64,000 nt of DNA, from contig NC_042997.1 of the NCBI RefSeq assembly GCF_006345805.1, positions 128,712,001 to 128,776,000 on the forward strand, written 5' to 3'. The notes below the pieces were generated by a model that saw nothing but the letters and a program-made list of their open reading frames with translations, ran no database searches and was not told the origin of the DNA. The translations under genes were made by a program, and so were the position numbers. Below, piece by piece: positions 732-62,060 of the stretch. The DNA comes from Octopus sinensis (taxonomy: Eukaryota). Each line of letters begins with the position of its first letter. The first letter of the stretch is position 1.

Positions 732-1610
732 CAAGGTGGTATCAAAAAGTTCCCAGACTAGTTATGTTTAATAAAAAAGATACCTCATTTACCTAAGTCT
801 TAACATGATCTCCTTCAAAACAGACACCTTGTGCAGCCATTCACCAGTCCCAGTGTTCCTGCTACTCTTGGAATCTGGCCTGGAAGTAATTTTTTGTAAG
901 CAAGTTGAGGACCTTCTATGATCCACTCTTGATTTCCACAACATTATGTTAAAATGGTACCCTTTGAGATGCCTTTTCATCTTATAGAAGAGATGGAAGT
1001 CTGCTGTTGCTAAATCTGGTGAATATGGTGGGTGTGGAAACGATACCATGTTGGTTTTGGCAAGAAACACACAAGTGAGGAGAGAGAACTTGGTTACAGT
1101 TTTCATTGTCATCATGAAGAATCTAATTCTTCACACTCCACAGATCCAGTTGTTTGTGCCTAATGTTCTACATAGAATGCCTCAAAATGTTGTTGATTGT
1201 CCTCTGATGATCTTCATCCACAAGCTGATGAATTTTTACCACATCTCCAGGGATGACACTTGTAGCAGGTCTTCTAGATCACTCATCATCTTCCAGGAAC
1301 ATTCTTCCACTTTTGAAATGCCCGTGCCACTTGAAACATTGAATATGATCCATTGCCTCATTGCCATATGCTTGCTGAAGCATGTTCAATGCTTCTGTAG
1401 CAGATTCCCTGAGTTTAATGCAAAATTCCATGTTGGCTCTTTGTTCTAGCATCCTGTCCATAACCAAAATCACAGACTAGAGCATACATGTGATCACAAA
1501 AACACAAATTTCATAACTTGCAAAGTAAACACAGCAATGTCACTCAGCACACAAGCATGTGCTGCCATCTGTTGGCACACTACAGTCCAGGAACTTCTTC
1601 ATACCACCTG
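732..1610 (-). mobile_element. Internally deleted mariner (DD34D-type) transposon
   Basis: Imperfect ~30-bp TIRs (caaggtggtatcaaaaagttcccagact vs RC caggtggtatgaagaagttcctggact), TA at the right end. ORF 1279-1473 has a mariner HTH (EQRANMEFCIKLRESATEALNMLQQAYG); ORF 789-1115 has HPPYSPDLATADFHLF; LHDDN is also present. The WVPH/first-D region is missing. Confidence 0.9.
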
Positions 1611-3524: not shown

Positions 3525-3657
3525 CCTGAAGGGAGAATTGTTGGCTTAGCTTCTGATATACATGATGGTCTTCTTTTCTGGTCTGATGTCAGTGAAAGCA
3601 AGCGTGGTATTTATAGATCTTACTTAAATGGTAGTGATGTACGACTAATCTTGAAAG
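3525..3657 (+). CDS. Internal exon encoding an LDL-receptor class B (YWTD beta-propeller) repeat, LRP/LDLR/vitellogenin-receptor-like protein
   Basis: Polypyrimidine tract plus CAG acceptor (3511-3524) and G|GTGAGT donor (3658). Open frame, phase 0 to 1: PEGRIVGLASDIHDGLLFWSDVSESKRGIYRSYLNGSDVRLILK(G), matching the GLAxD...L(F/Y)W(S/T)D...I.R..L.G pattern. Confidence 0.85.
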
Positions 3658-4369
3658 GTGAGTTAACCATTTCATTTAACTCTTTCTTTAATGGAATTCT
3701 ATCTCATTTCACCAATGTTCTATTGATTCACATAAAAACTAATGACAAGAAACAATTTTTTCTCATGTATATAATATTCTGATGGTACAACTTTTCAGTT
3801 CTGATGCAAATGGAATTCTCTTGAAAAAGAGAAAATGTGAGACAAAGTCATAAGGTCAGATATCAGAATGTCAGGCCTCACAAAGGTAATGGTAAGAATC
3901 ACCACAAATGGAGAGTTGCTGTTAAAATGAACCTATCCAACATGCATGCATGGAAAAGCAGATGTAAAAATGGTATCATTGGTGGTGGTGGTGGTGGTGG
4001 TGGAATTTTTGCAAAGCATATCATCATTATCAGTGTATTCATGCCAACCTCTCCAACCTTGCTTCAGATGAGAATACATTGGGATGGAGTTTCCAAGTGA
4101 GATAATAATCTTCCAGTCTATCAAACAAAAAACAACCCAAATTTGTTTGTGCAGAGAACTAGAAATAAACATCACTGTACGATTGAGCCTTTTGTTTACA
4201 AAGTTCAAGCAGCACATCAGAAACATGTCATGAAATCTAGACTTGATTTTGTGGTAGACTACAAGGAAACATCATCATCAGTGGGGTCATTGTTTATAAC
4301 CAACAAACGCATGTGAAGACAAAGAAAAGATAAACTCACACTCTCTCTCTCACACACACACACACATGA

Positions 4370-4650: not shown

Positions 4651-6016
4651 AAGTTCCTGTCACAGTATCCAATCTATGTCAGCAAATGATGACAATGATG
4701 GTGACAATATATCTTATGAGCTTCTTTCAATTTCTGTTTACCAAATCCTCTCACAAAATTTTGATCAGGCTGAGACTATTGAAGAATATACTTGTCCAAA
4801 TTGCTATATAGTGGGACTGAACCCAAAGCTATATGGATGGAAAGTAAACATAACTGCACAGCCCTCCCTACACCTACAAAAATTGTCCAAGGTGAAGTGC
4901 TTCCTAAAGCAAATTTCTTTAGCAAATTCTTATGTAGCAAACTGAACTTCAAATCAGTCATTAGGATTCTGCATTCTATTAATTATTGTCAAAGTAGGTT
5001 TAGCATCTATACATTGGTTGGAATCTACAGAAGAGCAAAAAGACAACCTAGAACTGTAAATGATTTTCAACAAATATTAATTAGCAAAGCAGCTGCTTGG
5101 GAGGAACATTTCTCTGAATTTTCATCAATAAATTTCTTCTTTCATAAAAACCAAATGAAAAACCAAAGTAAATACTCATCTTGTTGATTAGATTTTGGAA
5201 ACTATTTCAAGTGTCTAAAAAGGTTTATTTTGTCTTTAAGAAGCACTTCACAAGAATTAATTTGTTGTTGATGTATTTTTCTTTTATGAAGAATGCACAT
5301 TGGCACCTAAAATGCTATATGCTGGTGGAGGGCTGTAACTCTACTATTTGAATAATAACATCTTTTGTTTGAATAGTAATAAAAACAACTACATCAACAA
5401 CAACAATAACAATAACAGCAACAATGATAATAATTGAAATTGACTTTCTTAGTTGTCAGAATTGATGGTCATCATTATTCTTGTTTTGCTTACTGTCATT
5501 TTAAATTAAAACTTTCTTCCAATTTCGATTTATTTTTCTGACCTTCTGTCTCATTCAATATGTCTGAAGTTCATTGGAATTGTTTTTTTTTTGTTTGTTT
5601 GCTAATGTTTATTGGGTGTCAGACCATTAATGTTTGTTCTATCAAGTAGATTTCCTTGAGATTTATGAGAATAAGGATGTGCATGCCTATATTAGTTGGT
5701 AGAAACAGTGTATCTGTTTGTATGTATTTGCATAAACATGTGTAATATTTATCCATTATATGAATTCATTTCCTGTCATACAACATTACACTTTTAATAC
5801 TGACCCTTGAATTTTCCTTCATACTGTGACAGAAACACCTTTGCTGTCAGCATAATGAAAACCTTAAATATTTTGTATCCACCTCAGATATTAGCTGCTA
5901 CTGTCAACACCTCTATCTATTGTATTAGCTGTCGTTGTCATTTAGTCCTAAGTCAGTCCTAATCAAACAGATCAATGACATTCATACCACAATCAGGATC
6001 ATGATGATGATGATGA

Positions 6017-6215
6017 TCATCATCATCATCATTTAACGTCCACTCTCTATGCTGGCATGGGTTAGACAGTTTCACTGGTGCTGATGAGTCAGAGAGCTGC
6101 ACCAGACTCCAGTCTGATTTGGCAAGGTTTCTATGGCTGGATGCCCTTCCAAATTTCAACCACTCCAGGAGTTTAATGAGTGTTTTTACGTGTCACTGGC
6201 ACATGTGCCATTTGC
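6017..6215 (-). mobile_element. RTE-associated 3' end with (GAT)n tail (family D)
   Basis: (cat)n-ttaacgtcc...gctggatgcccttcc motif shared with more than 10 other copies in the window. Confidence 0.7.
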
Positions 6216-6552
6216 ATTCCAACTCATTTCAAGCATATCATATCTTGGAATATATCATTCAGTATATCTTACCTTTCTGTTGTTGAGTCAGTTTTGATCT
6301 CACAGACCTATGATCAAGGTATACCATACATGATAATCACAGCTTTATTACATATTGTATATCTAGGCTCACATTCTCAAATCTGCCCTTCCACTTTTTA
6401 AGACTATAGAGGAGTGTGCTTTGACTGTTAATTTTAGAAGGTTCAATGACCATAGAGTGGCTCTCTTTTGATTCAGACTGCAGTACTATATCATCCAGGT
6501 ATTTCCACAAATTATTTATATTCTTCAATCATTCTTATATATGGATAGATGT

Positions 6553-7000: not shown

Positions 7001-7769
7001 AATCACCAATGTATATGTGTTTATCTGCACGTGTGTATGTGGGGAATTTCATAAGAAATAAAATGATGTATGTTGTTTTAAAGAACAGATCCACTCTGTC
7101 CTTAGCACTGCCTATATTTTACAAAGACTTAGATCAACTGAACTAATTGGAGTAGCTTCTTTTGTTGCTTGTTAAATTTGAAATACACTTAGAGGAAGTT
7201 TATGACTATTAATTGCTTGGATAACATCATTTGATCAAAATTTTTTCAACTCACTATATTTCATTTGTGATATGCTACCATATTCATATTTAATACCCAG
7301 AACACTGTGTATGTGTGTATAGAACATATATACAAAATATTACCACCATACCACCATACTTATTATGTAGAGTAGTTCTTTCCTATTACAATATTTATGT
7401 ATCTTTTAATTAACACACCTACCATTATTTCTCCACTGGAATCATTGGTGTGGAACGACAACATAATAACATCTGTCATTTATACTCTACTCAACACTAC
7501 GCATATTCATTTATTTATTCCTTTATTGCTTTCAGTCACTGGACTGTGGCCGTGCTTAGACACCACCTTCAAGAATTATTTCAGTCTGGTACTTATTTCA
7601 TTGAGGTGTATAGTTGTCAAATTGATAAGTTATGGTACATAAAGGGACATAACTTGAACAGTGCTGGGTTTTAGACTCGTGTAAACATAAACACATATGT
7701 AGTCACAAGCACATTTGTATAGTCATACATATACATGCAGCTGGAGTATGATCACCTGTGTGTATATAA

Positions 7770-12834: not shown

Positions 12835-13170
12835 AACCTGTTCACCCCAACCACATGGTTTCAGATACCCGACCATGTAGCTCTGGGTTGTCTCAGGTAA
12901 CTGTCTTCTACTATAGCCCTAGACTGATCAAAGCCTTGTGTGAGGATTTTGTAGATGGAAACTAAAAGAAATCCTCCATATATATGGGTGTGCATGCATT
13001 ATATGTCTGTTTGTTTACATCTGCCATCACTCATACAAAATTGTGACATTTGGTGTTGTCAGTTTCTCCTGTCAACAAATTATCTGAGCCATTGAAGCCC
13101 TGTAAGGCAATATCTCAAATAGCACATCTGTCCAATCTATACAAAGATGGAAAATTAACATAAAACAAAT
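12835..13170 (+). mobile_element. Decayed tRNA-derived SINE (family A)
   Basis: ccaaccacatggtttcag...ctactatagccc...aaagccttgtg...gatggaaact; homologous to the 57352-57762 copy. Confidence 0.6.
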
Positions 13171-17650: not shown

Positions 17651-20059
17651 CAAGGAAGCCTATACACTAGCCAATGAGGAAATTTTTTATGGTTGCTTGT
17701 CTTCTTAGAAGTTTCCTCATTGCTTTGTGTAGAAATTTCCTGTGTGTTGTTGGCATTTGATGATAATAGACAATAGCTAAGTTAGTCTTGAATCAAGGTA
17801 GCTGAAACCTGAATTGTGGAGGATATTTGGAGAAAATTTAATGAGTAATAAGAACCAGAGTAGGCATAGATGGAGTTAAAATCAGAGGAATGGGAGAACT
17901 AATACATAAAACTGATACACTGTTATATATAATGCAAATACTTACCTGTTCATTACTGCCATACAAATTATGCCAGTAAAAATAATGATATTTGTGTCAT
18001 TCACCATAAAATCAGATGATGTCACTGTGTTTGCTTGACCTGCTAGCAATGGGAGCTATATCTCTCTTAAATAACACTCTGTTAGCTTTAAACAAGGAAG
18101 GGCATTTTAGATAATGTAGTCTGATATAAACTATATTTGCAAAGACTGGATAATCACAGCTAGAAAATCACTACTGCCAAAAACCACAATGACAGCTATG
18201 AAGGGATTATGAAGATTAGGAAAATCTCAGGGAAACTTCAACTGAGAAGCATATCACATAAAAGTTAGATACCATAAAGTATTCAATCTGGTGATGTTAA
18301 CCCAGTTTGTGATTCTCAGTAGAAGATTACTTCAACCAGAATATTTAAGACTGAAAGCTAACATTTTGTCTACATCATAACAAAGTGATGAAACTGATGC
18401 TAGATATTGTACTATAATGACGATGACTTTAATGTGACAGCATTAATCATCAATCAGATTAATCAGCAAATTTTATGGGGCTAGGTTAATGATCAGAAAA
18501 ATTGCACCCCATAGGATTATTACTTTTCTCACTTTCATACAAATAAAATATTCCCTAAATGTATTCAATGACAGCCAGAACTAATTGTAAATTTTGCCTA
18601 AATTATTCTTATGATTGTGCACTTTCTTTTTGAACTCAACTAATGATGCTGGCACAAATCTCTGAAAACTAGATTATTGAGTTTATGTGATGCTTTCATG
18701 AGATTGTAGAACTACAATACTAACCAAGATGAAAAGAATGTAATATATATCAGACAAAATTTTGAAAATAAACTTATATTTGCTAACTAGTACTATAACC
18801 TTAGATCATATGAATAAAACACATTATTTGATCACAAAATACATTTTTGCTATATTTAATTGTACACATGGAAAGCTATCCAGTTGAACTATGTAGCACT
18901 GTAGCTTTGCTTTATAATGAGCTATCAGAAGATAATTTCAGCATGTCTGCTTTGAAGAGATTCTGCTGACTTAAAGAAATTTCATTTAATTCCTGTCATG
19001 TGATCAAAAATTTCAGCTAAGTATGTCCTGTAATAGTTGTTAATTATATGTAAATCTCTTTAATGGGTGCATACACCATACTGTTTAGTTCTTCATGAAA
19101 CTGGAAACTCTATCTAAATGCAATCTCTTGAATGTAAATTTGGTCGTGGGTTTATGGATCTAATTTCATATATCGGTGATGCAAAAGGTTTCTTCGTGGA
19201 AAATACCGCTAATTATCTTTCAAACTGTAATAATTATGAAGTAGGTGGTATTCAAATAGTGATATATGCCCTTTTGAAATTGATCTAATATAGATAGAAT
19301 AAACATTCAGAATATATTAGTTACCAAAAAAAGTATGTTACACTTTATTTATTATTGCTATTTTATACATTTTTTTATGCCCCAAATATTTTTAAAATGT
19401 TTACTTTTATTACTTTAGATGATATATTTTAAATAGAATTTACTAAAAGCATCTGACTGTGACATAATGGTAAGGAGGATCAAAATAGATAAACGATAAC
19501 TGATAGTGGAGTTTATGTAAATGATATATGCTTTACACACACACATAAGCTCACACACACACATAAATATATAAATGGATGTGTGCAAATGAAAGAGCAC
19601 TCAATGCATTATGTAGATATTATATCTGTATGTAGGCACTTAATGATTCAGATAGCACTCAGAGTTTCAAATGCATGAAAGTATAATGTATAATGGATGG
19701 ATCAAATTGATCAGATGTGTAAGTATGGTGTGTGTATGAGAAAGAAAGAGAGATCATTATTTTAACATTAATTTTTCCCATATTTGCGTGGGTCATACAA
19801 AATTCATGACGGCAAATTTTCTAGTTTTATGTCCGTCCAGTCACTAAACCTTACCCGTTCCCAACTCCAGTAGTATTTCCTTTCATCCTTGAAACACAAA
19901 CAGCACTAAGGCTGGACATGATTTCATGAAGGATTGCAAAGAAATGACATCTCTTATATGAATGTCATTCCTTTACAACTAGTACCTAATCTCAAGATAA
20001 GGAGGCATGACTGTGCATGCACACACACACACACGCACTCACTCATATACTCACACATA

Positions 20060-20230
20060 GGTACAATGGCTGTCTTTTAGTTTCCTTCTACCAAATCTAC
20101 TCATAGGGCTTTGGTAGGTTCAAGCCTATAGCAAAAAGTACTTTTCTAAGAAAGTGCACTGTGAGAAAAAAAAAACCCCACAAACTTGTAGTGGGGAAGC
20201 AAACTTCTTAACCATACAGTCATGCTTGCA
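20060..20230 (-). mobile_element. SINE family A, partial
   Basis: ctaccaaatctactcatagggctttggt...gggaagcaaacttcttaaccatacag. Confidence 0.6.
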
Positions 20231-24364: not shown

Positions 24365-25615
24365 CAGGGGTTGGACAAAATAATGGAAACACCTAAAAAT
24401 TTCAAACAAATTTATTTTAATATGGTGTAGGACAGCCTTTAGCAGTAATTACAGCTTGAATTCTATGAGGTATGAACTCGTACAAAGTTTGAATTGTTTC
24501 CAAGGGAATTTTTGTCCATTCTTCAGCTAAAACAACCTCAAGTTCTTGTAGTGATGATGGTGGAGGATATCGACTCCTTATTTTTCTAAAATGTACCATA
24601 AATGTTCAATAATATTGAGATCTGGGAACTGTGGTAGCCAGATAAGATGCTCAACTTCACTAGAATGTTCCTCATGCCATTCAGTAACAACTTTAGCTGT
24701 GTGAATTGGTGCATTATCATCCTGAAGGATTGCGTTTCCCTCTAGAAACAGTTCTGTAAACATAGGATGAATTTGATCAGATAAAATGCTTAAATAGTCT
24801 TGACTATTATTTCTGCCATGAAGGGAAACCATTGGGCTGATAGATTTCCAAGATATAGCCCCCCAGATCATCCTCTATGTTTAACAGTTGGAAGAAGGCA
24901 CTCTGGATCAAATGTTTCTTTTGGCTGTCTTCACACGTATACTCAGCTGGTGGTCAGAAATAAGGAATAAAGATGACTTCTCCAAGAAAATAACATTCTT
25001 CCACTACTCTAGGGACTAATTCTGAAGGTTTTTACTCCACTCTAAAAGCTTTGCGACATTTTATTTTGAAAGTAGTCGTTTTCTGATTGCAGCCTTCCTA
25101 TGGAATCCGGCTTTGTACAGCTACCGGTGAACGGTTTTTGTGGAAACTGGGTTCTCGAGGTGGTCATTAAGCTCTGCAGTAATTTTGGGAGCTGTACTTT
25201 TGTGATCCTTTCTAACAATTTGCATAAGAGTCTGACAGTCCCTCTCTGAAAGTTTTGGTTTTCTTCCAGAGTTTTGATTCGATGAGGAGGTTTTTCCCTC
25301 TTTATCAAAGCTGTCGTTACTTTCAAGACAGTACTTCTTGATACACCAAACATTTTGGCTGTTTTCGTTATTCTAGCGCCTGCCATACAAGCACCAACAA
25401 TTTGACCTCTTTGAAAGTCCGATAGATCTGTCATTTTAATGATCTTTAATTACCTTTTTCTGATGATAACTGAAAAGAAACAGCAATTTTAGCAAAACAT
25501 ATTAAGCAACACTAATAATAAATAAAAAAACATAAAAATAAACAAGCTTTTGACAGTTTTACAGATATTTCAAAATTATGATGCTAGGTGTTTCCATTAT
25601 TTTGTCCAACCCCTG
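24365..25615 (-). mobile_element. Full-length Tc1 (DD34E-type) transposon with frameshifted transposase
   Basis: Perfect 30-bp TIRs caggggttggacaaaataatggaaacacct, TA TSD on both sides, 1251 bp. ORFs MTDLSDFQRGQIVGA (HTH), MIWGAIS, LQDDNAPIH, PDLNIIEHLW, IQAVITAKG. Confidence 0.95.
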
Positions 25616-31452: not shown

Positions 31453-31600
31453 ATCATCGTCATCATCATCATTTAACGTCCTCTTTCCATGTTGGTATGG
31501 ATTGGGTGGTTTGACATGGAGCTGGCTAGCAGTGAGCTGTCCAGACTCCAGTTGAGGCATGGTTTCAATGGCTGCATGCATTACCTTACACCAACCACTA
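31453..31600 (-). mobile_element. Family D 3' end
   Basis: (cat)n-ttaacgtcc...ccagactccag motif. Confidence 0.6.
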
Positions 31601-31977: not shown

Positions 31978-32599
31978 TAGAGTGGAGTAAAAACCTACAG
32001 AATTGGTCCATAGAGCAGTGGAAGAATGTTCTTTTCTTGGACGAGCCATCCTTTACCTTATTTCCAACCACTGGCTGAGTATACGTGTGGAAACAGCCAA
32101 AAGAAGCATTTGATCCAGACTGCCTTCTTCCATCTGTTAAACAGGGAGGAGGATCTGTGATGATCTGGGGGTCTATATCTTGGAAATCCATCAGCCCAAT
32201 GGTTTCTCTTCATGGCAGAATTAATAGTCAAGACTATTTAAGCATTTTATCTGATCAAATTCATCCTATGTTTACAGAACTGTTTCCGGAGGGAAACGCA
32301 ATCCTTCAGGATGATAATGCACCAGTTCACACAGCTAAAGTTGTTACTGAATGACACGAGGAACATTCTTGTGAAGTTGAACATTTTATCTAGCCACCAC
32401 ATTTTAGAAAAACAAGTAAGGAGTCAATATCCTCCACCACCATCACTACAAGAACTGGAGACTGTTTTAGCTGAAGAATGGACAAAAATTCCTTTGGAAA
32501 CAATTCAAGCTGTAATTACCACCAAAAGTTATCCTACCCCATTTTAAAGTAAATTTGTTTGAAATTTTAAGATGTTTCTATTATTTTGTCCAACCCCTG
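31978..32599 (+). mobile_element. 5'-truncated Tc1 copy (same family as 24365-25615)
   Basis: WKNVLFLDE, KQGGGSVMIWG, LQDDNAPVH; one TIR at 32570-32599 followed by TA; ~40-bp deletion removes PDLNIIEHLW; about 95% identical to the full copy by eye. Confidence 0.92.
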
Positions 32600-35336: not shown

Positions 35337-36050
35337 CATCATCATCATCATCATCATCATTTAACATCCATGTTCCATACTAGCATGGGTTGGACAGTTT
35401 AACAGGATCTGTTGGGTTTGAGACTGCATTATGTCCCAGTGTCTTTTTTGACATGGTTTCTATAGCTAGATGCCATTCCTTATACCAGCTACTTTACAGT
35501 TTGTACTGGGTGTTTTTTTTTTCCTGGCACCAGCACATGTGAGGTACTATCCTGCAAGATTAAGATCCCTTTTGACTTAGCTGGACTAAAATAGATAGGG
35601 AGGTGGCTTTATGATATGGGATGTTGGGTTAAAGTAGGAGAGAATAGAACTGGGTTTTTTTCTTCTTTTTTTTTTGTTTGTTGTAAAGGAGCCACACAGT
35701 TATTCACAATATACAAGAAAGGGTGTGAGTAACCAGAGTAGAGCTGGAAAGAGATAAAAATAGTGGTGATATGGTGTCAGGGTTGGCTTTAAAGATTGTA
35801 TGCGAGTAGAAGTGAGTGGGGACAGGAGAACAGGAAGTGTGGATAGAGGTTGCAAGAGAGTATGGGAGAGTAATGGATGATTAGAGATAGGGAATAAGCA
35901 AGAGGATGAATATTATGAAGAACAACTTTTGAGAGATGATAAGTAAGGAAGAGAAGATAACAATTGTAGAAATTGGAAAGGTTGAAGGATTGGGGTGGGT
36001 GGAGGGGACAGTATTAAGAGAATTAAAGATGAATAGTAAATAAAATGGAT
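35337..36050 (-). mobile_element. Family D 3' end with purine-rich segment
   Basis: (cat)n tail, gctagatgccattcc motif, long GA-rich region. Confidence 0.6.
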
Positions 36051-38190: not shown

Positions 38191-39772
38191 AAGGCCAGCT
38201 AAAATAGTGGAGTAATATACACTTTCCAACTCATAGTTATTGCCAATGCTATAACCTCACATCTCTCCACAATCTCTTCTATTCACTGTACCTATTTTTT
38301 TTACATACCCCCTGTCCTATTCATCATACCTAGACACTCATAATTAGGAAAAAAGTATCTGACCTGCTCATATTGAATACCCTACTTTCTCTATGCCTGT
38401 TATACAGAATATCTTCTCTGTACATATGTCTAGATTTCATCTAAATACAAGCATATTGTACTTAATAATACTCCTAATACTTTTACATCCTTGTATAAAT
38501 CATCTCAATATTACTGAAACATATTTTTTTCATTTTGTAACTATAATTTACTTTATTCTTTCCCCTCCAAATATTTCCACCAACTTTTCAATCTTATACA
38601 ATAAAACACAGAAAAAAACTACTAAAATTTGTTAATTCTCCTATTAGTCCTCACCTTATAACCTGAAAGCTATACTAATTTCAATCTTACATTTTATATT
38701 ATATATCCAAATTTTACATTAAATTGCCAACACAATTTCTCTTTAGCACCACAGCATCTTTTCCCTCACTCATTACCTGTATTAGCAATTTATTTCTTCC
38801 TCCACTTCTCACTTTTCTGACCTTTGTTACATAACATTTAACCTCTAAAACAACCCTATGACAATTAATTTTATGCTTTGAAAACACCAATATCCATTTT
38901 ACATTTTATATTATACATTCAAATGTTACATTAGATAACCATCATAATATCTTTCATACAATAATATAGATGTCCCAAATCTTATATCTTGACCTTTGCC
39001 ACAAAACCAACTTTTCCAAATGTAAAATCCATTGACAAATGTACTAATAACCAACTTGAAATTTTAAATATTAATATAATTACACTAACAATTACCACCC
39101 TCACATCTTCCTCTGGTACATGTTACAATGTATTTCCCTAACTTTATATCTCATGCAGATATCTCTTTACAAAGCTAAGCATTATGCACATTATAACATA
39201 ATATGCCTTTTATTAAACAACCAAATCAGTTTCATTAGGTTACTTCCTTATCATCTTAATAAGTCACTTTGTATCAAATGTAATTTCATTATTACTACCG
39301 ACTGTCAATGAATCTTTTCCTCCATTTTGCATGAGACGATACATATTCAAACAATTCCACATTTTGCCCAAACTTACTAAATTTTCAGAGTTATACCATG
39401 CCTTTGATATAACACCGATCTACAGTTTGCTATATACCTACAGACAAAATAATACATTACAAGGAAATTATTCTCTTCAGTTTGTGTAACACATTTTCTT
39501 AAATTATCTCTTAATTTCCTATAGTAAATTCAATATGTTCTGACTCTTTATAAAACAGATTTCTTTCATTCCACCTATCTAATTACTACCCTGATAAATG
39601 CACATTCCTAAATATACATACATTTATTTTCATTAACTTGAAAGTTTCTTTGACTTGGAGCTTGTTTGTAACACTCTTTCTTTCTCTCTCTCTCTCTCCC
39701 TCCCTCCCTCCCTCCCTCTCCCCCTTGCTCTCCCTCTCTCTTTCCCTCTCTCTCTCTCACACACACACACAT

Positions 39773-40590
39773 ATAATCATCATCATTTAACTTCCATTGC
39801 CCATGCTGCCATGGGCTGAACGGTTTGACCAGGGAGATGGTGAGCTGAGGGCCTGCATTAGACTCCAGTCTGATTTGGTATGGTTTCTACAGCTGAATGC
39901 CCTTCCTAATTCCAACCACTCCGAGGGTGTAATGGATGCTTTTACATGCCACTAGCACAGGTGCCAGTTGCATGACACCAGTATCTGCCACGGCTATGAT
40001 TTCACTTGGCTTGATGAGTTTTCTATTCAAGTACAGCATATTGCCAAAGGTTTCGGTCATTTGTCATTGCTTCCATGAAGCCCAATGCTCAATAGGTGCT
40101 TTTTACATGCCACCACTGGCATGGGTCCTAGTTACATGACACTGGCATCAGCGACATTGCCTCTGTGAAGCCCAATGTTCAAAAGGTGTTTTGCATGTGC
40201 CATCAGCACAGGTGACAGTTACATGACACCAGCATCAGCCATAACTATGACTTCACTTGGCTTGATGGGTTTTCTCAAGCATGGCATATCGTCACTAGTC
40301 ATTGTCTCAGTGATGTCCAATGTTCGAAGATCATGCTTCACCACCACATCCCATGTCTTCTTGGGTCTACTTCTTCCACATGTTCCCTCTACAGTTAAAG
40401 ATCAGCACTTCTTTACTCAGCTGACTCATCCATACACATCACATGACCATACCAGCATAGTTGTCTCTATTGCAGACCACATCTGATGCCTCTTATGCCC
40501 AACTTTTCTCTTAAGACACTCTGTCAAACATGCACACTGACATTACACATCCAGTGAAGCATGCTAGCTTCATTTCTTACAAGCCTTCAC
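39773..40590 (-). mobile_element. RTE LINE 3' end: ORF C-terminus, repeat-containing 3' UTR and (GAT)n tail
   Basis: The family D tail is contiguous with RC of ...GTCGRSRPKKTWDVVVKHDL; this links family D to the RTE ORF fragments. Confidence 0.8.
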
Positions 40591-49889: not shown

Positions 49890-50025
49890 GTATGCTTCCC
49901 AACCAAATGGTTTCAGGTTTCAGTCCCACTGTGCAGTACCATGAGCAAATGTCTTCTACAATAACCAAAAGCTTGTGAGTGGATTTGACCGATGGAAACT
50001 GAACTGAAAGAAACCTGACATATAT
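49890..50025 (+). mobile_element. SINE family A, 5' part
   Basis: cccaaccaaatggtttcaggtttcagtcccactgtg...cttgtgagtggatttg. Confidence 0.65.
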
Positions 50026-51365
50026 ATATGTGTATGTATGTATTTATGTATGTGCATGTATACACACACACAGAGGTGTTCACTCTATCACAGCCTCTGC
50101 AGGTGGTGTTGTGACTTCTATTGCAACTTCTCCACTTACTCTGTACCTTCATAGACGTGTGAATTACAAGATCCCTTACTTAAAAAAATAGGTAAGGGTT
50201 AGCAATAGGAAAGGCATCTAGATGTAAAGCAATGGTTCAATAATATATTCAAGAATGCAAGCATGGAAAAAATGTAGATGTAAAACAAATTAACAACATA
50301 TAGTATGTTAGTCTGTAAAGTAGACAGTATGTTGGTCTGTAATGAAAAGCATGCATTTGTCCAAGATGGTGTCAGGACATGATTATCATTACTGCAGAAC
50401 TTTCTAAACATGGATTGTGATATTAGAGAAAGCTGATCCCTGCAATATTGCCTAAACCCAAAGTTCATCATACATTCCTATGTTAGCTTTTCATCAGATT
50501 TGTTGATCAAGCGCAAACAGAGGATGGCGTAGCATTTTTAGGTTTCCAGTTTTGCTTTCCAGTCTTTTACAACATAAGCAATTACATTTTCTTTTTTTTT
50601 TTTTGCATCTTCTTCATTATTGGAGATAAATACTTGAAAAATTAGGTTAATTATGATTATTGACAAAAAGATTATTCTAACTCACTTTTTCCTTGTTTCT
50701 TACATGTTATTTCTTGCCATAGTATTCTGATTAAAGATGAAATTCATGATTTGTAAATATTTGATTAGTTTTTCTTTACATTTTCATTCAACTTGCTGAA
50801 TCTAATTTATTTTCTAGTCTTATTTCAAATTACAAATCAACAGATTTTTGTTTCAATCCCCAGTTTCTCCTCTAACAGTTAATTTCAGCTGATGACGGAG
50901 TCCATTTATTTTTTACATCTGTTTCTTTTGACTTGCTTCTTTTGTATTTGTTGATTTTTTAATAAGATTTAATGAGATATTACAAAGAAAAAACTTTGCT
51001 TACAATTCTAATAATGTAGGTCACTAAAAGAATCACTAATCAAAGACAAACTTTTGGCTTGTTCTTGTGTTCTAATAAGATTCACCTAGTCATTCCATTA
51101 TATGGTGTAATTATAGGCTTTTTATAGTCTAATTGCTTTGAAACATAGCAGTTATGACCTGACAGAGATTCAAGCTTACAGTATTTCCATAGATAGAAAA
51201 TAGATAAAGGTAGATTAAAGTAGGTTGGCATTACTTTTGGTAACTCATTCTCTGATTTCTAAACTAAATGGAAATAATTAAACATCTTGCAGAGGAGAAT
51301 ATTTCAGCTACGTGGAACATCCTCTCGTTATCTATGTCTTGTTATCACCTAAGATTAGAAATCTG

Positions 51366-51462
51366 TCGGCAATACAGATACTAAAATTGGAATGATACAG
51401 AGAAGATTAGCATGGCCCCTGCACAAGGATGACATGAAAATTCATGAAGTGATCCATATTTT
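51366..51462 (+). pseudogene. U6: U6 snRNA retrocopy (U6 nt 10-106)
   Basis: 87/97 identical to canonical U6 as recalled; ACAGAGA box and AGC triad intact; 5 of 6 CpGs mutated to TG/CA; 5' 9 nt are not U6-like; followed directly by a retroposon tail. Confidence 0.93.
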
Positions 51463-51524
51463 CCAACAGTGGTGTCCCAGCATGGCCACAGCTTTGAGCT
51501 GAAACCGATAAAAGAATATATATA

Positions 51525-52085
51525 TCATCATCATTTAACATCTGGTTTCCTTGCTAACTCTTTTCCTTGGGTTAGATGGTTTGACTGGAACTGGTAAGTC
51601 AGAGAGCTGCACCAGGTTCCAGTCTGACTTTGCATGGTTTCTACAGCTGGATGCCCTTCCTAATGCCAACCACTCCGAAAGTGTAATGGGTGTTTTTTAC
51701 ATGCCACTGGCACAGGTGCTATTTACATGACACCAGCAACGTCCATGACTACAATTTCACTTACATGACACTGACAACAGCCACAACTACAATTTCACTT
51801 GATTTGATGAGTCTTCTCTAGCACAGCATATCACCAAAGGTCTCAGTCACTTGTCATTGGCTCTGTGAGGCCCAACACTCAAAGATCATGCTTCACCACC
51901 TCATCCCTCACCTCCATGAGGCCCAGCATTCAAAGATCATGCTACTGGCAATGGCCACAACTATGATTTCATGGGTGCCATTTACATGATACTGGCAATG
52001 GCCATGACTATGATTTCACTTAGCTTGACAAGTCTTCTCAAGCACAGCATATCGCCAAAGGTCCTGATTACTAGTCATCACCTCT
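51525..52085 (-). mobile_element. Family D 3' end with internal tandem repeats
   Basis: (cat)n tail, ctacagctggatgcccttcctaatgccaacc, repeated gactacaatttcact units. Confidence 0.75.
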
Positions 52086-53104
52086 GTACATTCCTCACTG
52101 TGTCCCTGGGAAGATGCATACATTCCTCTCTGTGTCCTGGGGAAGATCCTCAAGCACTTTCCTCATCTTGCCCATCAGCTCTACATTGTTGTTGCATGCA
52201 GAACAGTTGGTGTCATTCTAAACTACACCACTCTCTTTGAAATCCATGAGATTACAATTGCAGGAATAAGGAGGCCAGAAATTAGGGCTGGTGAAATTGT
52301 AGAATTTCTCTGACATTCACTTCTGACACCTTTCCAAAGTATGGCAAGGAGCCAAATCCTATTGCCACACATATAGCCTTCCAGCAGCAGCCCACTCCAG
52401 CCAGGGATTGGCCACAGTCACCAGCAGCTTCACATAGCCCTATGAAATGAGCTAAGGGTATGTTCAAAGATTGGTGTGACATAATGTCACATTCAATGGA
52501 TATACACTTGAAGACCATCACAATTTGGGGGAACTTAGTTTTCATGATTTATAGGACATCACATGGATTGTAGGCAAGCCATCTGTTCTTCTGGGTGTTG
52601 TGCAACTGATCCCAGCAGTTTTTTCTCATCTTAGAAGAACCAGGTCATTTCCAGCTCAGCAGGATGCCTCAGTTTGTTCCGGAACTTTGTCAAGTGCTCC
52701 TCCTTGTTCTTTGCTGTCAGAATTTGTCCCTGAACACTCTTGTATGTGTGGTAATGAAAGTCCCCATTCAGGGCTAGCTTCATGGTGGTGACCCCAACAC
52801 CCATCTCTTGCCACAGCCCAGATTCTCTTGCTCAGATTTTCCATCACCTTGATAGAATTCTGATGTGCAGACACAGAACGCCTGCTGTGTTCCTTCATAG
52901 TCTCCATTGCAACTATCCTTGTCATGTTTTACAGCCTTTACAATGTATCATAATACAGTTAATTCTTCTATTCTTTAGATGGCTTCACATCAGTTACTTT
53001 TTCTCAACTACAACTATTATCATTATGCTCTTCAATACCAATACATCAAGCTGTTCTTGAAAGAAGGAGACATAAAAACCTTTAAATTTAGCCTGAACAA
53101 CATG
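52085..53104 (-). mobile_element. maT (DD37D) transposon relic
   Basis: RC gives NGDYEGT, WFF*DEK (D1), RWLAYNP, KTKFPQIVMVF, YVWQ*DLAPCH (D2) and FWPPYSCNCNLMD (D3), with 37 residues between D2 and D3; TIR-like end plus TA at 53104-53106. Confidence 0.85.
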
Positions 53105-53675: not shown

Positions 53676-54057
53676 TTCTTTCTTTTATTCTTTTACTTAT
53701 TTCAGTCATTTGACTGCAGTGAAGCTGGAGCACCACCTTAAAGGGCTTTAGTCAAAGAAATTGTCCCCAGGACTTATTCTATGTAGGCCTAGCACTTATT
53801 CTATTGGTCTCTTTTGCCAAACTGCTAAGTGACAAGGACATAAACACACCGGCATCAGTTGTCAAGTGATGGTGGGGGGGACAAGCACATGCACGCACTC
53901 AAACATATACGACGGGCTTCTTTCAGTTTCCATCTACCAAATCCACTCACAAGGCTTTGGTCGGCCCAAGGCTATGATAGAAGATACTTGCCCAAGGTAC
54001 CATGTAGTGGAACTGACCCTTGATCCATGTGGTTGGGAAGCAAGCTTCTTACCACAC
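53676..54057 (-). mobile_element. Full-length tRNA-derived SINE (family A)
   Basis: tRNA-like head at the right end, central (CA)-rich part, tail RC ggtgctccagc...cagtcaaatgactgaaataagtaaaagaata. Confidence 0.85.
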
Positions 54058-54839
54058 TATAGTCATTGGAGGCAAAAGAGAGCAACTCTAATGTTGTTTG
54101 TAGAGTGTCACAGACTGTTGAGATTGATGCAGCTGGTATTTAGCTTCAATATCTGCCTGTGGAAGAACCATGGCTAGGAAGAGAATTCCAGGGGAATTGC
54201 AGTTCTGATTAAATATGTGATAGAGTGTTTAGGATAGGACACAGTAAAGATAATGTGAGGAAAAGAAGAGATAGATGTGTTCAGTCACCAGCCTGAGGAA
54301 ATTATGCAGTCACTGGTTTAAATGAGCAAAGACTGTTATAATAGTAGCAGAAGAAAGAGGGAGGAAATAGCATATTAGTGAGCCAATAGTTGAAGTGTGT
54401 TGCTGTGTCTTTAGCAATCTTCAGTGAATGGCTTTCTTGTAGATTGTATTTTGTCATTGTGTCCATTCATAGCCAAGACACTTAACATTTGCTAGCTAAG
54501 CAAATTTAGTTATCATTAGATTCCAAACATAGCTACCATTCATCAATGTAAGCAGCACAAGTATCATGAAATTAATGAATGTTTTGTTAGTTTTCTGTGC
54601 CAGTCTCAAGAGTTCTTATGTCTGGAGAAGGCTGCTGGAAACCATGGAAGTATCACTACCACCACCTTATGAGATCTTGAAATCATCATCTTTAAGACTT
54701 ATATTTTCTCATAAGATTTTCAACAGTATAATGTGGAAGAAGTAAACAGCACCAGAAGAGATTGAATGTTGATGGGTGTATATGCTTCAGAAATAGCAAA
54801 ATGGTCAGGAAGCTGGAAATAGCAGAGAAAGGACAGTAT

Positions 54840-57150: not shown

Positions 57151-57351
57151 TAAATATCCATGGTTGATGTATAAATATTTTCATTGGATTAAAATGCAAG
57201 TGTAATGGACAGTACAAAAGATATTTCTTAAAATAGAATATAACAGTTGCTATATGTTTGTTTAAATAACTCATAGCTTTGGCTGACCTATCTAAAGTAA
57301 TAAATACAAATCATATTCATGTTCAGATAGTACCCAGATTTTTTTTGTATG

Positions 57352-57566
57352 CTCTTTACTCTTTTACTTGTTTTAGTCATTTGACTGTGGCCATGCTGGA
57401 GCACCGCCTTTAGTCGAACAAATTGACCCCAGGACTTATTCTTTGTAAGCCTAGTACTTATTCTATCGGTCTTTTTTGCCGAACCAGTAAGTTACGGGGA
57501 CGTAAACACACCAGCATCAGTTGTCAAGCAATGTTGGAGGGACAAACATATACACACACGTACATA

Positions 57567-57601
<35 letters not shown>

Positions 57602-57762
57602 GCATACATATATACAACGGGCTTCTTTCAGTTTCTGTCTACCAAATCCACTCACAAGGCTTTGGTCGGCCTGAGGCTATAGTAGGAGACGCTTGCCCAA
57701 GGTGCCACGCAGTGGGACTGAACCCGGAACCATGTGGTTGGTAAGCAAGCTACTTACCACAC
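57352..57762 (-). mobile_element. Young full-length tRNA-derived SINE (family A)
   Basis: RC head gtgtggtaagtagcttgc...ggttccgggttcagtcc (A/B-box-like), CpGs retained, internal (TA/CA)n, same tail as 53676-54057. Confidence 0.9.
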
Positions 57763-57794
57763 TCCTATAATACTATAGTTTCCTGTAGTATGGC

Positions 57795-58070
57795 ATGACT
57801 GTGAATAAGAATCTTGCTTTGCAATCACATGATTTTTGGTTCAGTCCCACTGGGCAGTACCATGGGCAAGTGTTTTCTACTATAGCCCCACTATATGTTT
57901 TATAAGTGAATTTGGTACATGGAAACTGTGAAGAAGCCCATTATGTAAGTGCATGACTTTGTGCTTATGTTTGTTCGGCCCCTCCCAGTTTGACAACTAG
58001 TTGGTTAGTTTATGTTCCTGTAACAGAGCATTTCAGCAAAAAAAGATCCATAGAATAGGTAACATACTTT
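57795..58070 (+). mobile_element. Old SINE family A copy, head-to-head with the previous one
   Basis: ggttcagtcccactg...gggcaagtgttttctactatagccc...gacaact...atagaata. Confidence 0.7.
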
Positions 58071-58084
58071 GAAAAATATATACA

Positions 58085-58235
58085 GACTCTTGGAGTGGTT
58101 GGTGGTAGGAAGGGCATCCAGCTGTAGAAACATTGCCAGATCAGATTGGAACCTGGTGCAGCTGCTGGCTCTCCAGACCTCAGTCAAACTATCCAACCCA
58201 TGCCAGCATGGAAAACAGACATTAAACGACAATGA
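58085..58235 (+). mobile_element. Family D 3' end
   Basis: ggaagggcatccagctgtagaaac...cccatgccagcatggaaaacagacattaaacgac. Confidence 0.75.
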
Positions 58236-60785
58236 TTTGTTTCAGTGTGCTGCCCCAGCATAGCCACAGTCCAGTGACTGAAACAAGTAATAAAAGATAG
58301 CAGATTTGTTTAAAACTAAATTATTAATTGGAGGGACAATGGCTTGGCAGAATTAGATTGAAATCTTCGCTGTATTTGACTGCATCCTTTTATGTTCTCA
58401 TTCAAATATCAGTCAAGAACCATTCTCTGTTCAATTTTTAAAATTTTACTTTTAACTGTTGTTGCTCTAATTTGGCATAAATGTGTGTGTGTGTGTTTTT
58501 GAGCTTTTCAGTGCTGCAAAACACTGTTTCCTAAATAGCAATCATTAACATACACGATAAAGGTATGTTGAACTCTGTCAAGAAAAGGTAAACTGAGTTT
58601 GTAACCTAGTTTCAATTCTGCCACGGCACCATTCCAACGTAGTTATGCTATTTACTTTCTCTTTGCAATGTATAAATATCAAAACATTTCTTCTTATTTT
58701 CTGTAATCAATAGAACCAGTCACCCTTTGATGGATTCTCTGAACTATTGATTCTGTTCATCACTCTTGTGAGGAATGAATAAGTATTGATTGACATGGCA
58801 TTTAATTCCTGAAGTAGTAAACAATTGGTCAGCTTTGAGGTTTTTTTTAGATAAAAAGAATAGATACTAAAAAGTCAACTGGTTGTATCAGAAGAGGCAA
58901 CAATAAAAATAGTAATAAAAATAAAAACTACAAAAGTAGAGTACAAAGATATAGCTTACATCAAATTTTCCATCAAATTTCTATTTGTTTCATTTTTCTA
59001 ACTGCCCAGCTATCTTGAAACACTTCTTCACGTTATCAAAATGTCAGAGTGTAAAGAACAATGTTAGAAAACAAAAAAAATGAAAAAGAACTACTACCAT
59101 AGAAATAAAACCTCATTTCATTTTAGAAGGGCATAAAAAGTCTATTGTCCTTTATTACCATTATGTATCTTAGTAGAATAATTGTTCCATAGTGCTGGTT
59201 ATTTATTTATTCCTGTCTATCTAGTGTAAGGAAGTCGTTGGATGGCGAGGGTGGTAAGGAGGTTATATGCTGGTTTGTGGGGGCGGGTAAGAGGGATATG
59301 TAATGATGGTGGTGATGATGGGGATTTGGTGATGGTGGTGGGGGTAATGTAATGATTAATTGAACTTCGATCTCAGTTGATGGTATAACATTATTTTTTA
59401 TAGATCAGATATTGTGGTAAGAGGAAGTGGGTTATATTCTATCCTAACGATACACAGACAGATGAACACACACACACACACACTTGTATAATAGTGTAAT
59501 TCTTCAGCTATATTGCTCTAATAATGAGAAAAAGAGGAAAGCTATAGTTGTATATGGCCACCCAGTTCATTTAGCCATACAACACCCCACATTCCCCCAC
59601 TTGACTACACACACAGCCAACATAATAACCAAATCATAAAGACAAATGAAATTTCTTTGAACTTTGACCAACATATTTCATTAAAAGAAAGAAATTCTGC
59701 CACTATTTTATCAGGTTCATTATATATCGTCCCAGCCCTAGTTAGGCCAGCAACTTCTTTGCCACAAACCTTAACACATAAATATACCATAACCAACAAA
59801 AACAATACTCTTCATATCAGAACAGGCAACATACATCCTCTTTTACATTGATAAGCTACACACTGAAGTATAAATACTTACACTCAGACTCTTTTAGTTA
59901 TTTGGCTTGATGCTTTATTTCACTGGTTAAAGATTATTTTCAATAAATTAATATATATAGTGAGAGAGAGAGTGAGACGCTAGAACACATCTGGAGTCTA
60001 TATATTAGATTCTACAGTCTAAAAGTTTACATACATTACCTGTCTGGAGTCAGTGAAGAAGACACTATGTAGCCATTTGATTTGCTAGACTTCTCTCATA
60101 TTACAGCCTCCTCCTTTGTGTCATTAAGCCAACAAATGACCCCTGATGATTTCTTTAACATGTGCTTGCCATGGGAATCAGTTTGGGACTGTTCTCAGCA
60201 AGTGGTGTACATACTGGTTGTCCATCTTGACACATGGATAATGTAGTCTGATATGCAAAAATTCAGAAGGGAATGTCATGGCTAGAATACTTGACTGATG
60301 ATGTGTAGCTATAATGGTCAATATATATGACTGGTCATATGGAACTCTTAACAGTCAAATTGTGGTGAAAAGGTCTGCATAAATAAAAGTCACCTACCTA
60401 CTATAAAACAAGCCAGTAACACTTAATATCCTGCTGATACTGAGGTAGTCCAGAAACATTAATATTGAATTTAGGAATCTTATTGTTGCCTACTGCAAGG
60501 GCTTATACGGAAATATTAAAATAGAGGATAAAAAAAAGATAAAATTGTCACATAATCATTTTGCTTGTTTGTTTTCTGCTTTTATTTTTACATGTTTGCA
60601 TGGGATTGGTGAATATTTTATTTGAAGCATTGTTTTAGTCAGATGCCTTTTCTGATACTAGCCTTTACCTGTTTTTTATGTAAGGGATCACTTATTCCAC
60701 ATAGCTTTCAAGGTACATAGTGCCCAGGTGATTTGTTGACAGGTGAAACTAACAAAGAATCCAGCTGCTACACTTTTGAACAAGC

Positions 60786-61570: not shown

Positions 61571-62060
61571 TATCATCATCATTGTTTTTAACGTCCGCTT
61601 TCCATGCTGTCATGGGTTGGACAGTTTGATTGAGGACTGGCAAACCAAAAGGCTGCACTAGGCTCCAGTGTGATCTGGCAAGGTTTCTACAGCTGGATGC
61701 CCTTCCTAATGCCAACCACTCCAAGACTGTAGTGGGTGCTTTTTACGTGCCACCACCGAGGGTCAGTCAGGCAGTACTGGCATTGACCACACTTGAATAG
61801 TGCTTTTTATGTGCCACCAGAACAGGAGCCAGTCAGGCAGCACTGGCAACTACCACGCTCAAATGGTACTTTTTATGCACCACCGGCATGGGACCAGTCA
61901 GGCAGCACTGGCATCGACCACATTCATATGGTGCATTTTACATGTTACCGGCACAGGAGCCAATCCAGTGAGACTGGCATCAACAATGCTCGAATGGTGC
62001 TTTTTACATGACACCGGCACTGATGTCTGTCAGGCACTACTGGTATCAGCCACACCAATG
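61571..62060 (-). mobile_element. Family D 3' end with a 5 x ~65-bp minisatellite
   Basis: Tail motif plus units starting at 61736, 61800, 61866, 61931 and 61997. Confidence 0.85.

What the first reader, a model, noticed from the sequence alone, without database searches (positions are those of the whole stretch)
51366..51518. U6 snRNA fused to a retroposon 3' tail: chimeric retrocopy or an undescribed U6-containing SINE
Seen: 97 nt of U6 ending in exactly four T, joined without a gap to ccaacagtggtgtcccagcatggccacagctttgagctgaaaccgataaaagaata, which is homologous to the 3' tail of the family A SINEs (RC of 57352-57410 and 53676-53735; also ~58250-58295). Five of six CpGs have decayed, so this copy is not the functional gene. 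Established: U6/L1 chimeras occur in mammals, typically with four U at the junction and attributed to RtcB ligation or template switching; snRNA-headed SINEs (U1/U2) are known from crocodilians. Inference: a cephalopod LINE (RTE-like tail) has mobilised U6. If the junction is repeated genome-wide, this is a U6-based SINE family rather than a one-off event. I know of no description of this in cephalopods.
Basis: partly seen in the sequence, partly recalled or inferred. Interest (0 to 1): 0.8.

Follow-up and report, generated by a model that had tools for sequence, protein, structure and literature searches.

The report
U6 pseudogene fused to SINE tail
A dead, 5'-shortened copy of the U6 splicing RNA in an octopus genome is joined at its natural four-T end to the last ~56 bases of a retroposon tail; this is the signature of an accidental by-product of LINE reverse transcription that is already known from vertebrates, and nothing here shows it to be a new kind of mobile element.

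Summary
Window 51366-51462 (+) is U6 snRNA nt 10-106 (Rfam RF00026, 98.6 bits, the only Rfam hit in 64 kb). Five of its six CpGs have decayed and it ends in exactly TTTT. The next 56 nt (51463-51518) are a retroposon 3' tail. An HMM built only from the tails of the abundant octopus SINE finds 51469-51521 at E=4.7e-8. The tail is not a copy of that SINE's tail. It is 58-69% identical to those tails, which are 83-94% identical to each other, and it keeps the second of two hairpins through a double compensatory change. It therefore comes from a related but different LINE or SINE lineage. The structure (5'-truncated U6, short stringent-type tail, same orientation, no poly(A), no clear TSD) matches the U6/L2, U6/RTE and U6/SINE chimeras described in platypus and lizard. 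I read it as one old chimeric retropseudogene, made by template switching or RNA ligation. A U6-headed SINE family is disfavoured: the U6 terminator sits between head and tail, animal U6 promoters are external, the 5' stem is missing, and 84 kb of octopus DNA holds no second copy. It is not excluded, because no cephalopod genome could be searched. This is a new member of a known kind, of modest interest.

The parts
51366..51462 (+). U6 snRNA pseudogene, U6 nt 10-106 (5'-truncated by about 9 nt). The ACAGAGA box and AGC triad are intact. Five of six CpGs have decayed.
   Evidence: Rfam RF00026, 98.6 bits; local alignment to canonical U6 and nhmmer E=4.8e-20.
51459..51462 (+). TTTT, the natural 3' end (Pol III terminator) of U6; this is the junction point.
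   Evidence: Read directly; it aligns to the terminal U run of U6.
51463..51468 (+). CCAACA, six junction bases outside the significant tail alignment. They are either donor sequence upstream of the tail module (weakly like SINE 'CTAAAG/CTGAAG') or filler.
   Evidence: The HMM alignment starts at 51469; BLAST matches to other tails also start at 51469.
51469..51518 (+). Retroposon 3' tail module, homologous to the 3' tail of the abundant octopus SINE but from a distinct lineage. It ends in an A-rich GATAAAAGAATA terminus like the SINE ends.
   Evidence: nhmmer E=4.7e-8 with an HMM that excludes this copy; identity matrix; alignment A5.
51469..51486 (+). Predicted tail hairpin 1 (GU.GGUG / CAUG.GC type), shared with the SINE tails.
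   Evidence: RNAalifold consensus and single-sequence folds; 92.9% of cells paired.
51489..51501 (+). Predicted tail hairpin 2, CAGCU-UUG-AGCUG. The SINE tails have CAGUC-AAAU/CAGU-GACUG, so two adjacent pairs changed on both sides with pairing kept.
   Evidence: pairs 31-38 UA>CG and 32-37 CG>UA, in this sequence only. This variant was not found elsewhere in 84 kb.
51517..51525 (.). (TA)4-5 run at the 3' boundary. It is probably the terminal microsatellite or target site. Another SINE copy ends the same way (L003 3959-3976).
51526..52090 (-). Neighbour, not part of the chimera: the 3' end of a LINE-like repeat 'B' in the opposite orientation. Its (GAT)n tail abuts the TA run. The order of insertion is unknown and the right-hand limit is approximate.
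   Evidence: Self-BLAST to six or more other B copies; B termini compared.

Best explanation
This is a single, old chimeric retropseudogene in an Octopus genome. Inferred: the reverse transcriptase of a stringent-type (non-poly(A)) octopus LINE started target-primed reverse transcription on an RNA carrying its two-hairpin 3' tail. That RNA was the LINE itself or one of its SINEs, from a lineage related to but distinct from the abundant SINE in the window. The U6 part became attached in one of two ways. Either the enzyme jumped to the 3' oligo-U end of a mature nuclear U6 snRNA after about 56 nt, or U6 (2',3'-cyclic phosphate end) had already been ligated to a 5'-OH fragment of the tail RNA by RtcB and the chimeric RNA was copied as one template. 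Reverse transcription or 5' joining stopped about 9 nt short of the U6 5' end. Shown: the order, orientation and exact junction of the two parts, the truncation, and the decay. The copy has no promoter and has since decayed neutrally, with five of six CpGs lost. It has no function as U6, and no evidence shows that it propagated further.
For: (1) U6 nt 10-106 in sense orientation ends at its own T4 and runs straight into a 5'-truncated retroposon 3' end that reaches the retroposon terminus. (2) The tail is significantly homologous to the SINE tails (E=4.7e-8 with an independent HMM) and contains the whole two-hairpin module. (3) It is a distinct tail lineage rather than a decayed copy of the local SINE: 58-69% against 83-94% identity, with hairpin 2 kept by a double compensatory change. 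(4) The upstream flank 51000-51365 is unique in 84 kb, so only the U6 and tail parts are retroposed material. (5) The 5' stem is missing, five of six CpGs are decayed, and no TATA-like box was seen by eye about 30 nt upstream. (6) The same architecture, a mostly 5'-truncated U6 plus a short stringent-LINE or SINE 3' sequence with small or no TSD, is documented for L2/Mon-1 in platypus and for L2, RTE and AnolisSINE2 in Anolis (PMC4476161). U6 is the snRNA favoured in such events. RtcB ligation of U6 to 5'-truncated RNAs is documented (PMC6789731). (7) By my rough estimate, about one SINE fragment per 7 kb gives odds of about 2e-4 that an unrelated fragment would start within 3 nt of the U6 end in the same orientation.
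Against: No target-site duplication could be identified around 51366-51525, although some copies of the related SINE do show ~10-nt TSDs. The 3' flank is occupied by another element, so the TSD may be lost or displaced. The donor LINE or SINE with this exact tail variant was not found. Six junction bases (CCAACA) are unexplained. Uniqueness in the genome is not shown, because only 84 kb of octopus DNA could be examined. Template switching and RNA ligation cannot be told apart from one DNA copy.
Confidence: 0.78

Rival explanations
1. It is one member of an undescribed U6-headed SINE family. A master copy with a U6 head and a LINE tail is transcribed and repeatedly retrotransposed by the partner LINE.
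For: The chimera carries everything a stringent LINE should need in cis, namely the complete two-hairpin tail plus terminus. snRNA-headed SINEs (U1/U2, SINEU) exist and probably arose from just such template-switch chimeras (PMC4494074). The tail variant is unlike the common SINE tail, as would be expected if it belonged to a separate family.
Against: The natural U6 terminator TTTT lies between head and tail, so a Pol III transcript started in the head should end before the tail. Animal U6 promoters are upstream and external (established knowledge; also stated in PMC4494074) and are not carried in a retrocopy. The U6 5' stem-loop is missing. There is no second U6 or second copy of this tail variant in the window or in 20 kb of O. 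vulgaris DNA, where the ordinary SINE occurs about 15 times. A six-frame junction-peptide profile found nothing in 5.8 billion proteins, but this is a weak test because that database holds almost no raw octopus ORFs.
Confidence: 0.07
2. Two independent retroposition events produced the structure. A U6 retropseudogene inserted first, and a severely 5'-truncated SINE or LINE copy later landed exactly at its oligo-T end.
For: No TSD brackets the whole unit. Six bases at the junction (51463-51468) are outside the tail alignment. Doucet et al. interpret one U6atac/Alu case without a TSD this way. T-rich or TA-rich sites may be preferred targets of these elements.
Against: The tail has no TSD of its own: ATTTT on the left, TATATA on the right. 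A stand-alone U6 retrocopy without poly(A) or a LINE tail has no known route of insertion with stringent LINEs (PMC4476161). The coincidence of position and orientation has an estimated probability of about 2e-4.
Confidence: 0.08
3. It is a former resident U6 gene that decayed in place. Its 5' end was lost by a small rearrangement and a truncated SINE was inserted just after its terminator.
For: U6 genes are multicopy and some copies die. The sequence ends at the gene's own terminator.
Against: The first 9 nt are absent and replaced by unrelated sequence. No TATA-like box is seen about 30 nt upstream (by eye only). This reading needs two extra events compared with the chimera model.
Confidence: 0.04

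Closest known systems
U6/L2, U6/Mon-1 (platypus) and U6/L2, U6/RTEX-2, U6/AnolisSINE2 (Anolis) chimeric retropseudogenes (Doucet et al. 2015, PMC4476161)
   Same: U6 in sense orientation is joined at its 3' end to a short 5'-truncated 3' piece of a stringent (non-poly(A)) LINE or its SINE. U6 is usually 5'-truncated. TSDs are small or absent. The origin is attributed to template switching.
   Different: The host is a cephalopod mollusc. The donor element is unidentified. The tail is a two-hairpin module related to an octopus SINE. Only one copy has been seen.
Human U6/L1 chimeric pseudogenes (Buzdin 2002; Garcia-Perez 2007; Moldovan 2019, PMC6789731)
   Same: The junction is at the U6 oligo-U end and the LINE part is 5'-truncated. 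The mechanism is template switching or RtcB ligation.
   Different: L1 is a relaxed, poly(A)-dependent LINE. In human the U6 is normally full length and the unit is flanked by 7-20 nt TSDs at an L1 endonuclease site. Here there is no poly(A), U6 is 5'-truncated and no TSD was found.
SINEU: U1/U2 snRNA-headed SINEs of crocodilians (Kojima 2015, PMC4494074)
   Same: An snRNA-derived 5' part lies on a retroposon body, and the heads are thought to be added by template switching.
   Different: SINEU are true multi-copy families with subfamilies and shared internal deletions. Their heads are Pol II snRNAs. Here there is one copy, a U6 head, and a Pol III terminator between head and tail.
Octopus tRNA-derived / CORE-type SINEs (OK, OR1, OR2; Ohshima & Okada 1994, cited in PMC4758252)
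   Same: The comparator repeat in the window (about 410 bp, with a CORE/MIR-like 'ccttgggcaag' segment) supplies the tail homology. A translated piece of it matches an Octopus vulgaris protein model.
   Different: Assignment of the window's SINE to OR2 rests on my memory plus one sentence and was not tested against a reference sequence. The tail fused to U6 belongs to a different lineage from this SINE.

Membership tests
U6 spliceosomal RNA (Rfam RF00026) | Covariance-model score above the gathering threshold | tested here: met
   98.6 bits against 44.
Functional U6 gene | Complete 5' stem-loop (nt 1-20) and intact conserved positions | tested here: not met
   Nt 1-9 are absent, cmscan flags the 5' stem pairs as non-canonical, and there are 10 substitutions of which 5 are CpG decay.
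Functional U6 gene | Upstream type-3 Pol III promoter (TATA about -30, PSE about -55) | tested here: inconclusive
   No TATA-like box was seen by eye in 51287-51356. The octopus PSE consensus is unknown to me and no formal scan was made.
U6/LINE (or SINE) chimeric retropseudogene | The U6 3' oligo-T is joined directly, in the same orientation, to a 5'-truncated retroposon | tested here: met
   T4 at 51459-51462 is followed by tail homology from 51469, with a 6-nt gap of uncertain origin.
U6/LINE (or SINE) chimeric retropseudogene | The retroposon part extends to the retroposon's own 3' terminus | tested here: met
   The alignment reaches HMM position 59 of about 60, and the A-rich GATAAAAGAATA(TA)n end resembles other SINE ends.
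U6/LINE (or SINE) chimeric retropseudogene | One target-site duplication brackets the whole unit | tested here: inconclusive
   No shared k-mer of 7 nt or more between the 5' flank and the 3' boundary. The 3' flank is occupied by another element. Small or absent TSDs are reported for L2 and RTE chimeras.
SINE family (snRNA-headed, SINEU-like) | Many dispersed copies share the same head-tail junction and a family consensus | not testable with these tools
   No cephalopod genome is in any searchable collection. There were zero further copies in 84 kb.
SINE family (snRNA-headed, SINEU-like) | Head and tail can be transcribed as one unit (internal promoter, no terminator between them) | tested here: not met
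   TTTT lies between head and tail and the U6 5' part is truncated. That animal U6 promoters are external is established knowledge, not tested here.
SINE family (snRNA-headed, SINEU-like) | A 3' tail shared with a partner LINE | tested here: inconclusive
   The tail is shared with SINEs, but no LINE with this tail was found in the window or in L003.
Stringent-type LINE/SINE tail | Conserved 3' stem-loop(s) kept by compensatory change, and no poly(A) | tested here: inconclusive
   The two-hairpin consensus has 93.8% of cells paired. Two pairs have changes on both sides, but both occur in one sequence, and 29 of 500 shuffles reach this count. Only 8 sequences were used. No poly(A) is present.

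The most novel reading that the evidence does not exclude
The locus is one copy of a genuine U6-headed retroposon family in octopuses. In that reading, a U6 + two-hairpin-tail RNA is made repeatedly, for example by Pol III read-through of a weak T4, by Pol II co-transcription within introns, or by recurrent RtcB ligation to the same tail fragment. It is then mobilised by a stringent LINE with a fixed junction. This would be the first SINE-like family built on a U6 head, and the first snRNA-headed one in an invertebrate.
Probability: 0.07. Interest if true: 0.65.

Novelty: new member of a known kind. Interest (0 to 1): 0.3.

Why it matters
If the chimera reading is right, it extends the known range of U6 capture by non-L1, tail-specific LINE machineries from vertebrates to a cephalopod. 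That fits the idea that joining U6 to LINE or SINE tails is a general property of non-LTR retrotransposition. It also marks the past activity of a tail lineage different from the dominant octopus SINE. The double compensatory change in hairpin 2 gives a small piece of comparative support for a structured recognition module in octopus LINE/SINE tails. Such chimeras are the presumed raw material for new SINE heads, so a genome-wide census in octopuses, which are rich in SINEs, would be a cheap and informative follow-up. A single decayed copy is an ordinary by-product of retrotransposition.

Tried and rejected
(1) Genome-wide junction count. I scanned metagenome contigs and viral contigs for a U6 core followed 41-71 nt later by the tail core. 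The two metagenome hits (L001, L002) are unrelated: a protist- or fungus-like U6 with a partial duplicate, and a bacterial chance match. Scans of genome contigs and viral contigs for the tail variant were empty. None of these collections is expected to hold cephalopod DNA, so the negatives say little.

(2) Protein-database route. I translated the ORFs spanning the junction and searched 5.8 billion predicted proteins. The U6-frame profile returned 1147 U6-derived 'proteins'. The best 120 carry no octopus tail, and several are human U6/Alu or U6/L1 chimeras. A six-frame, tail-weighted junction profile returned nothing. That profile included hypothetical CpG-restored variants that I wrote myself. 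A control with a peptide from the abundant SINE found only 2 proteins, one of them from Octopus vulgaris. Raw octopus ORFs are therefore essentially absent from the database, and the negative result is uninformative.

(3) Exact look-ups of five window ORFs found nothing on record. The window's own assembly could not be located.

(4) TSD search: nothing convincing.

(5) I considered that 58242-58300 might be a second 'tail-only' chimera fused to the B LINE end. I rejected this. It is the normal tail of a SINE copy (57770-58300) split by a nested 150-nt B insertion.

(6) I did not run the exhaustive representative-protein search, because control (2) shows the library lacks the relevant DNA.

(7) No LINE carrying the tail was found in the window or in L003, so 'RTE-like' remains unverified.

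Full report
**What is there**

cmscan of the whole 64-kb window against Rfam gives a single hit: U6 (RF00026) at 51358-51463 on the + strand, 98.6 bits against a gathering score of 44. Local alignment and nhmmer against a canonical metazoan U6 place real homology at 51366-51462, which is U6 nt 10-106, 97 nt.

The nine bases upstream match the U6 5' end at 0 of 9 positions ungapped. cmscan marks the 5' stem pairs as non-canonical. The copy is therefore 5'-truncated, or at least lacks the 5' stem-loop.

There are ten mismatches to human U6. Five are CpG transitions (nt 37, 67, 79, 88, 94), and one CpG (TCGG) survives. The ACAGAGA box and the AGC triad are intact.

**The tail**

The 56 nt after the T run occur once in the window. 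An HMM built from seven such tails (four from the window, three from an Octopus vulgaris locus), without the U6-linked one, recovers 51469-51521 at E=4.7e-8.

Homology starts at 51469. The six bases CCAACA after the T run are outside the alignment.

The tail is not a copy of the local SINE's tail. It is 58-69% identical to the seven other tails. Tails of the main SINE subfamily are 83-94% identical to each other, and the two divergent copies (7510-7571 and 58240-58298) are 68-81% identical to the other SINE tails.

The tails fold into two short hairpins. Hairpin 2 is CAGUC-(AAAU/CAGU)-GACUG in the SINEs and CAGCU-UUG-AGCUG in the U6-linked tail. Two adjacent pairs have changed on both sides with pairing kept. 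With eight sequences, and both changes in one sequence, the statistics are weak: 29 of 500 shuffles reach the same count. Even so, it argues that the donor was a living relative with a selected structure, either a different SINE subfamily or the partner LINE, rather than a decayed copy of the common SINE. This variant occurs nowhere else in the 84 kb of octopus DNA available.

**Organism and context**

A peptide translated from the SINE matches a 'hypothetical predicted protein' of Octopus vulgaris at 83% identity. The 20-kb locus around that gene (L003, chromosome OX597820.1) contains six tails of the same SINE. The window is therefore from an octopus, though probably not from that annotated assembly, since five window ORFs are not on record.

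The 5' flank 51000-51365 is unique in the 84 kb. The 3' end of the tail runs into (TA)4-5 (51517-51525), an ending also seen on a SINE copy in L003. It then abuts the (GAT)n tail of a LINE-like repeat 'B' lying in the opposite orientation. B copies are regularly followed by TA/CA microsatellites. Both elements may have targeted the same simple repeat, but the order of insertion cannot be told.

**Target-site duplication**

No TSD of 7 nt or more brackets 51366-51525. The tail has no TSD of its own either: ATTTT on its left, TATATA on its right. At least one full-length SINE copy shows a TSD of about 10 nt. The absence here is a real weakness, but the occupied 3' flank may explain it. Doucet et al. 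also report small or absent TSDs for L2- and RTE-type U6 chimeras.

**Mechanism**

The anatomy is that of a U6/retroposon chimeric retropseudogene. Shown: order, orientation, junction at the natural U6 end, 5' truncation of both parts, decay, and lack of a recognisable promoter.

Inferred: a stringent-type LINE reverse transcriptase initiated on an RNA bearing the two-hairpin tail. One possibility is that it switched template to the 3' end of nuclear U6 after about 56 nt. The other is that it copied a U6-tail RNA previously joined by RtcB between the U6 2',3'-cyclic phosphate and a 5'-OH tail fragment (PMC6789731). One DNA copy cannot separate the two routes. The ligation route would explain why the fragment retains the complete recognition module, because only such RNAs could be mobilised in cis by a tail-specific enzyme.

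My rough estimate for two unrelated insertions producing this junction is about 2e-4. This uses a density of about one SINE fragment per 7 kb. A lone U6 retrocopy also has no known route of insertion with stringent LINEs.

**Is it a SINE family?**

Nothing positive supports this. Three things argue against it:
- The U6 terminator lies between head and tail.
- Animal U6 genes use external upstream promoters (established knowledge; also stated in PMC4494074).
- The 5' stem-loop is missing.

There is also no second U6 or second copy of this tail variant in 84 kb, where the ordinary SINE occurs about 15 times.

The decisive test, a genome-wide junction count, could not be run. DNA scans of the metagenome, viral and prokaryote collections were empty or irrelevant. 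A protein-level workaround was negative. A control showed that the protein database holds almost no raw octopus ORFs, so that negative carries no weight. I put the SINE-family reading at about 7%.

**Comparison with what is known**

U6/L1 chimeras are classical in mammals. Doucet et al. 2015 describe U6 chimeras with L2 and the SINE Mon-1 in platypus. Forty such chimeras were found, almost all with 5'-truncated U6 upstream of a short L2 piece, and 72.5% of them have TSDs, all only 1-9 bp long. The same paper describes chimeras with L1-, L2- and RTE-like LINEs and with AnolisSINE2 in Anolis. The present locus matches that description point for point.

snRNA-headed SINEs (SINEU) have U1 or U2 heads and are true families. 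Full-text searches found no report of U6 chimeras or U6-headed SINEs in cephalopods or molluscs. The locus is best filed as a new member, in a new host lineage, of a known kind.

**Verdict**

Interest is modest at 0.3. It would rise to about 0.65 if a genome search showed a fixed junction repeated many times.

Noticed in passing
window 57348-57762 (-), 53684-54058 (-), 57770-58300 (+), 49893-50068, 4707-4847, 12903-13004, 20045-20131 and others; L003 2515-2922, 13375-13816, 14230-14633: An abundant ~410-bp SINE. It starts near aggagtggcTGTGTGGTAAGTAGC, has a CORE/MIR-like 'ccttgggcaag' segment, an internal TA/CA microsatellite and a two-hairpin tail ending in (TAAAAGAG)-like repeats. ARAGORN calls no tRNA in the window. 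It is probably the octopus CORE-type SINE (OR2-like), but this was not checked against a reference.
   Followed up: partly
window 57770-58300 (+), nested piece 58086-58236: A SINE copy is split by a nested 150-nt 3' fragment of the B LINE-like repeat. At first sight its tail (58242-58300) looks like a tail-only piece fused to the B end, but it is the SINE's own tail.
   Followed up: yes
window 51526-~52090 (-), 39771-40480 (-), 61571-61753 (-), 6022-6217 (-), 35350-35518 (-), 31462-31599 (-), 58086-58236 (+): The LINE-like repeat 'B' has a long 3' UTR with internal ~90-nt tandem repeats, a CCATGCCAGCATGG hairpin-like motif and a (GAT)n tail. The tail is almost always followed by a TA/CA microsatellite, which suggests microsatellite targeting or generation. 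The LINE clade was not determined.
   Followed up: partly
window 3480-3779 (+): An open frame contains a YWTD / LDL-receptor class B-like motif (GLLFWSDVSESKRGIYRSYLNGSD). The Pfam PF00058 score is 18.1 bits, below the cut-off of 21. It may be an exon of a host gene, in which case the rest of the window could be intronic.
   Followed up: partly
window 24581-25449 (-), 32079-32544 (+), 792-1130 (-): Decayed Tc1/mariner transposase fragments: DDE_3 at 36.4 bits, an HTH N-terminus, and a mariner-like 'PHPPYSPDLATADFHLF' piece.
   Followed up: partly
proteins P0003, P0060, P0090: The public protein collection holds 'proteins' that are translations of U6 genes and of human U6/Alu and U6/L1 chimeras, from ENA metagenome assemblies. 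About 1147 U6-derived ORFs were hit. This is host contamination annotated as protein.
   Followed up: no
L001 1150-1330 (-), metagenome contig Ga0307978_1058176: A U6-like gene of an unrelated (protist- or fungus-like) organism is followed about 60 nt downstream by a second, partial copy of its 3' half with its own T run.
   Followed up: no
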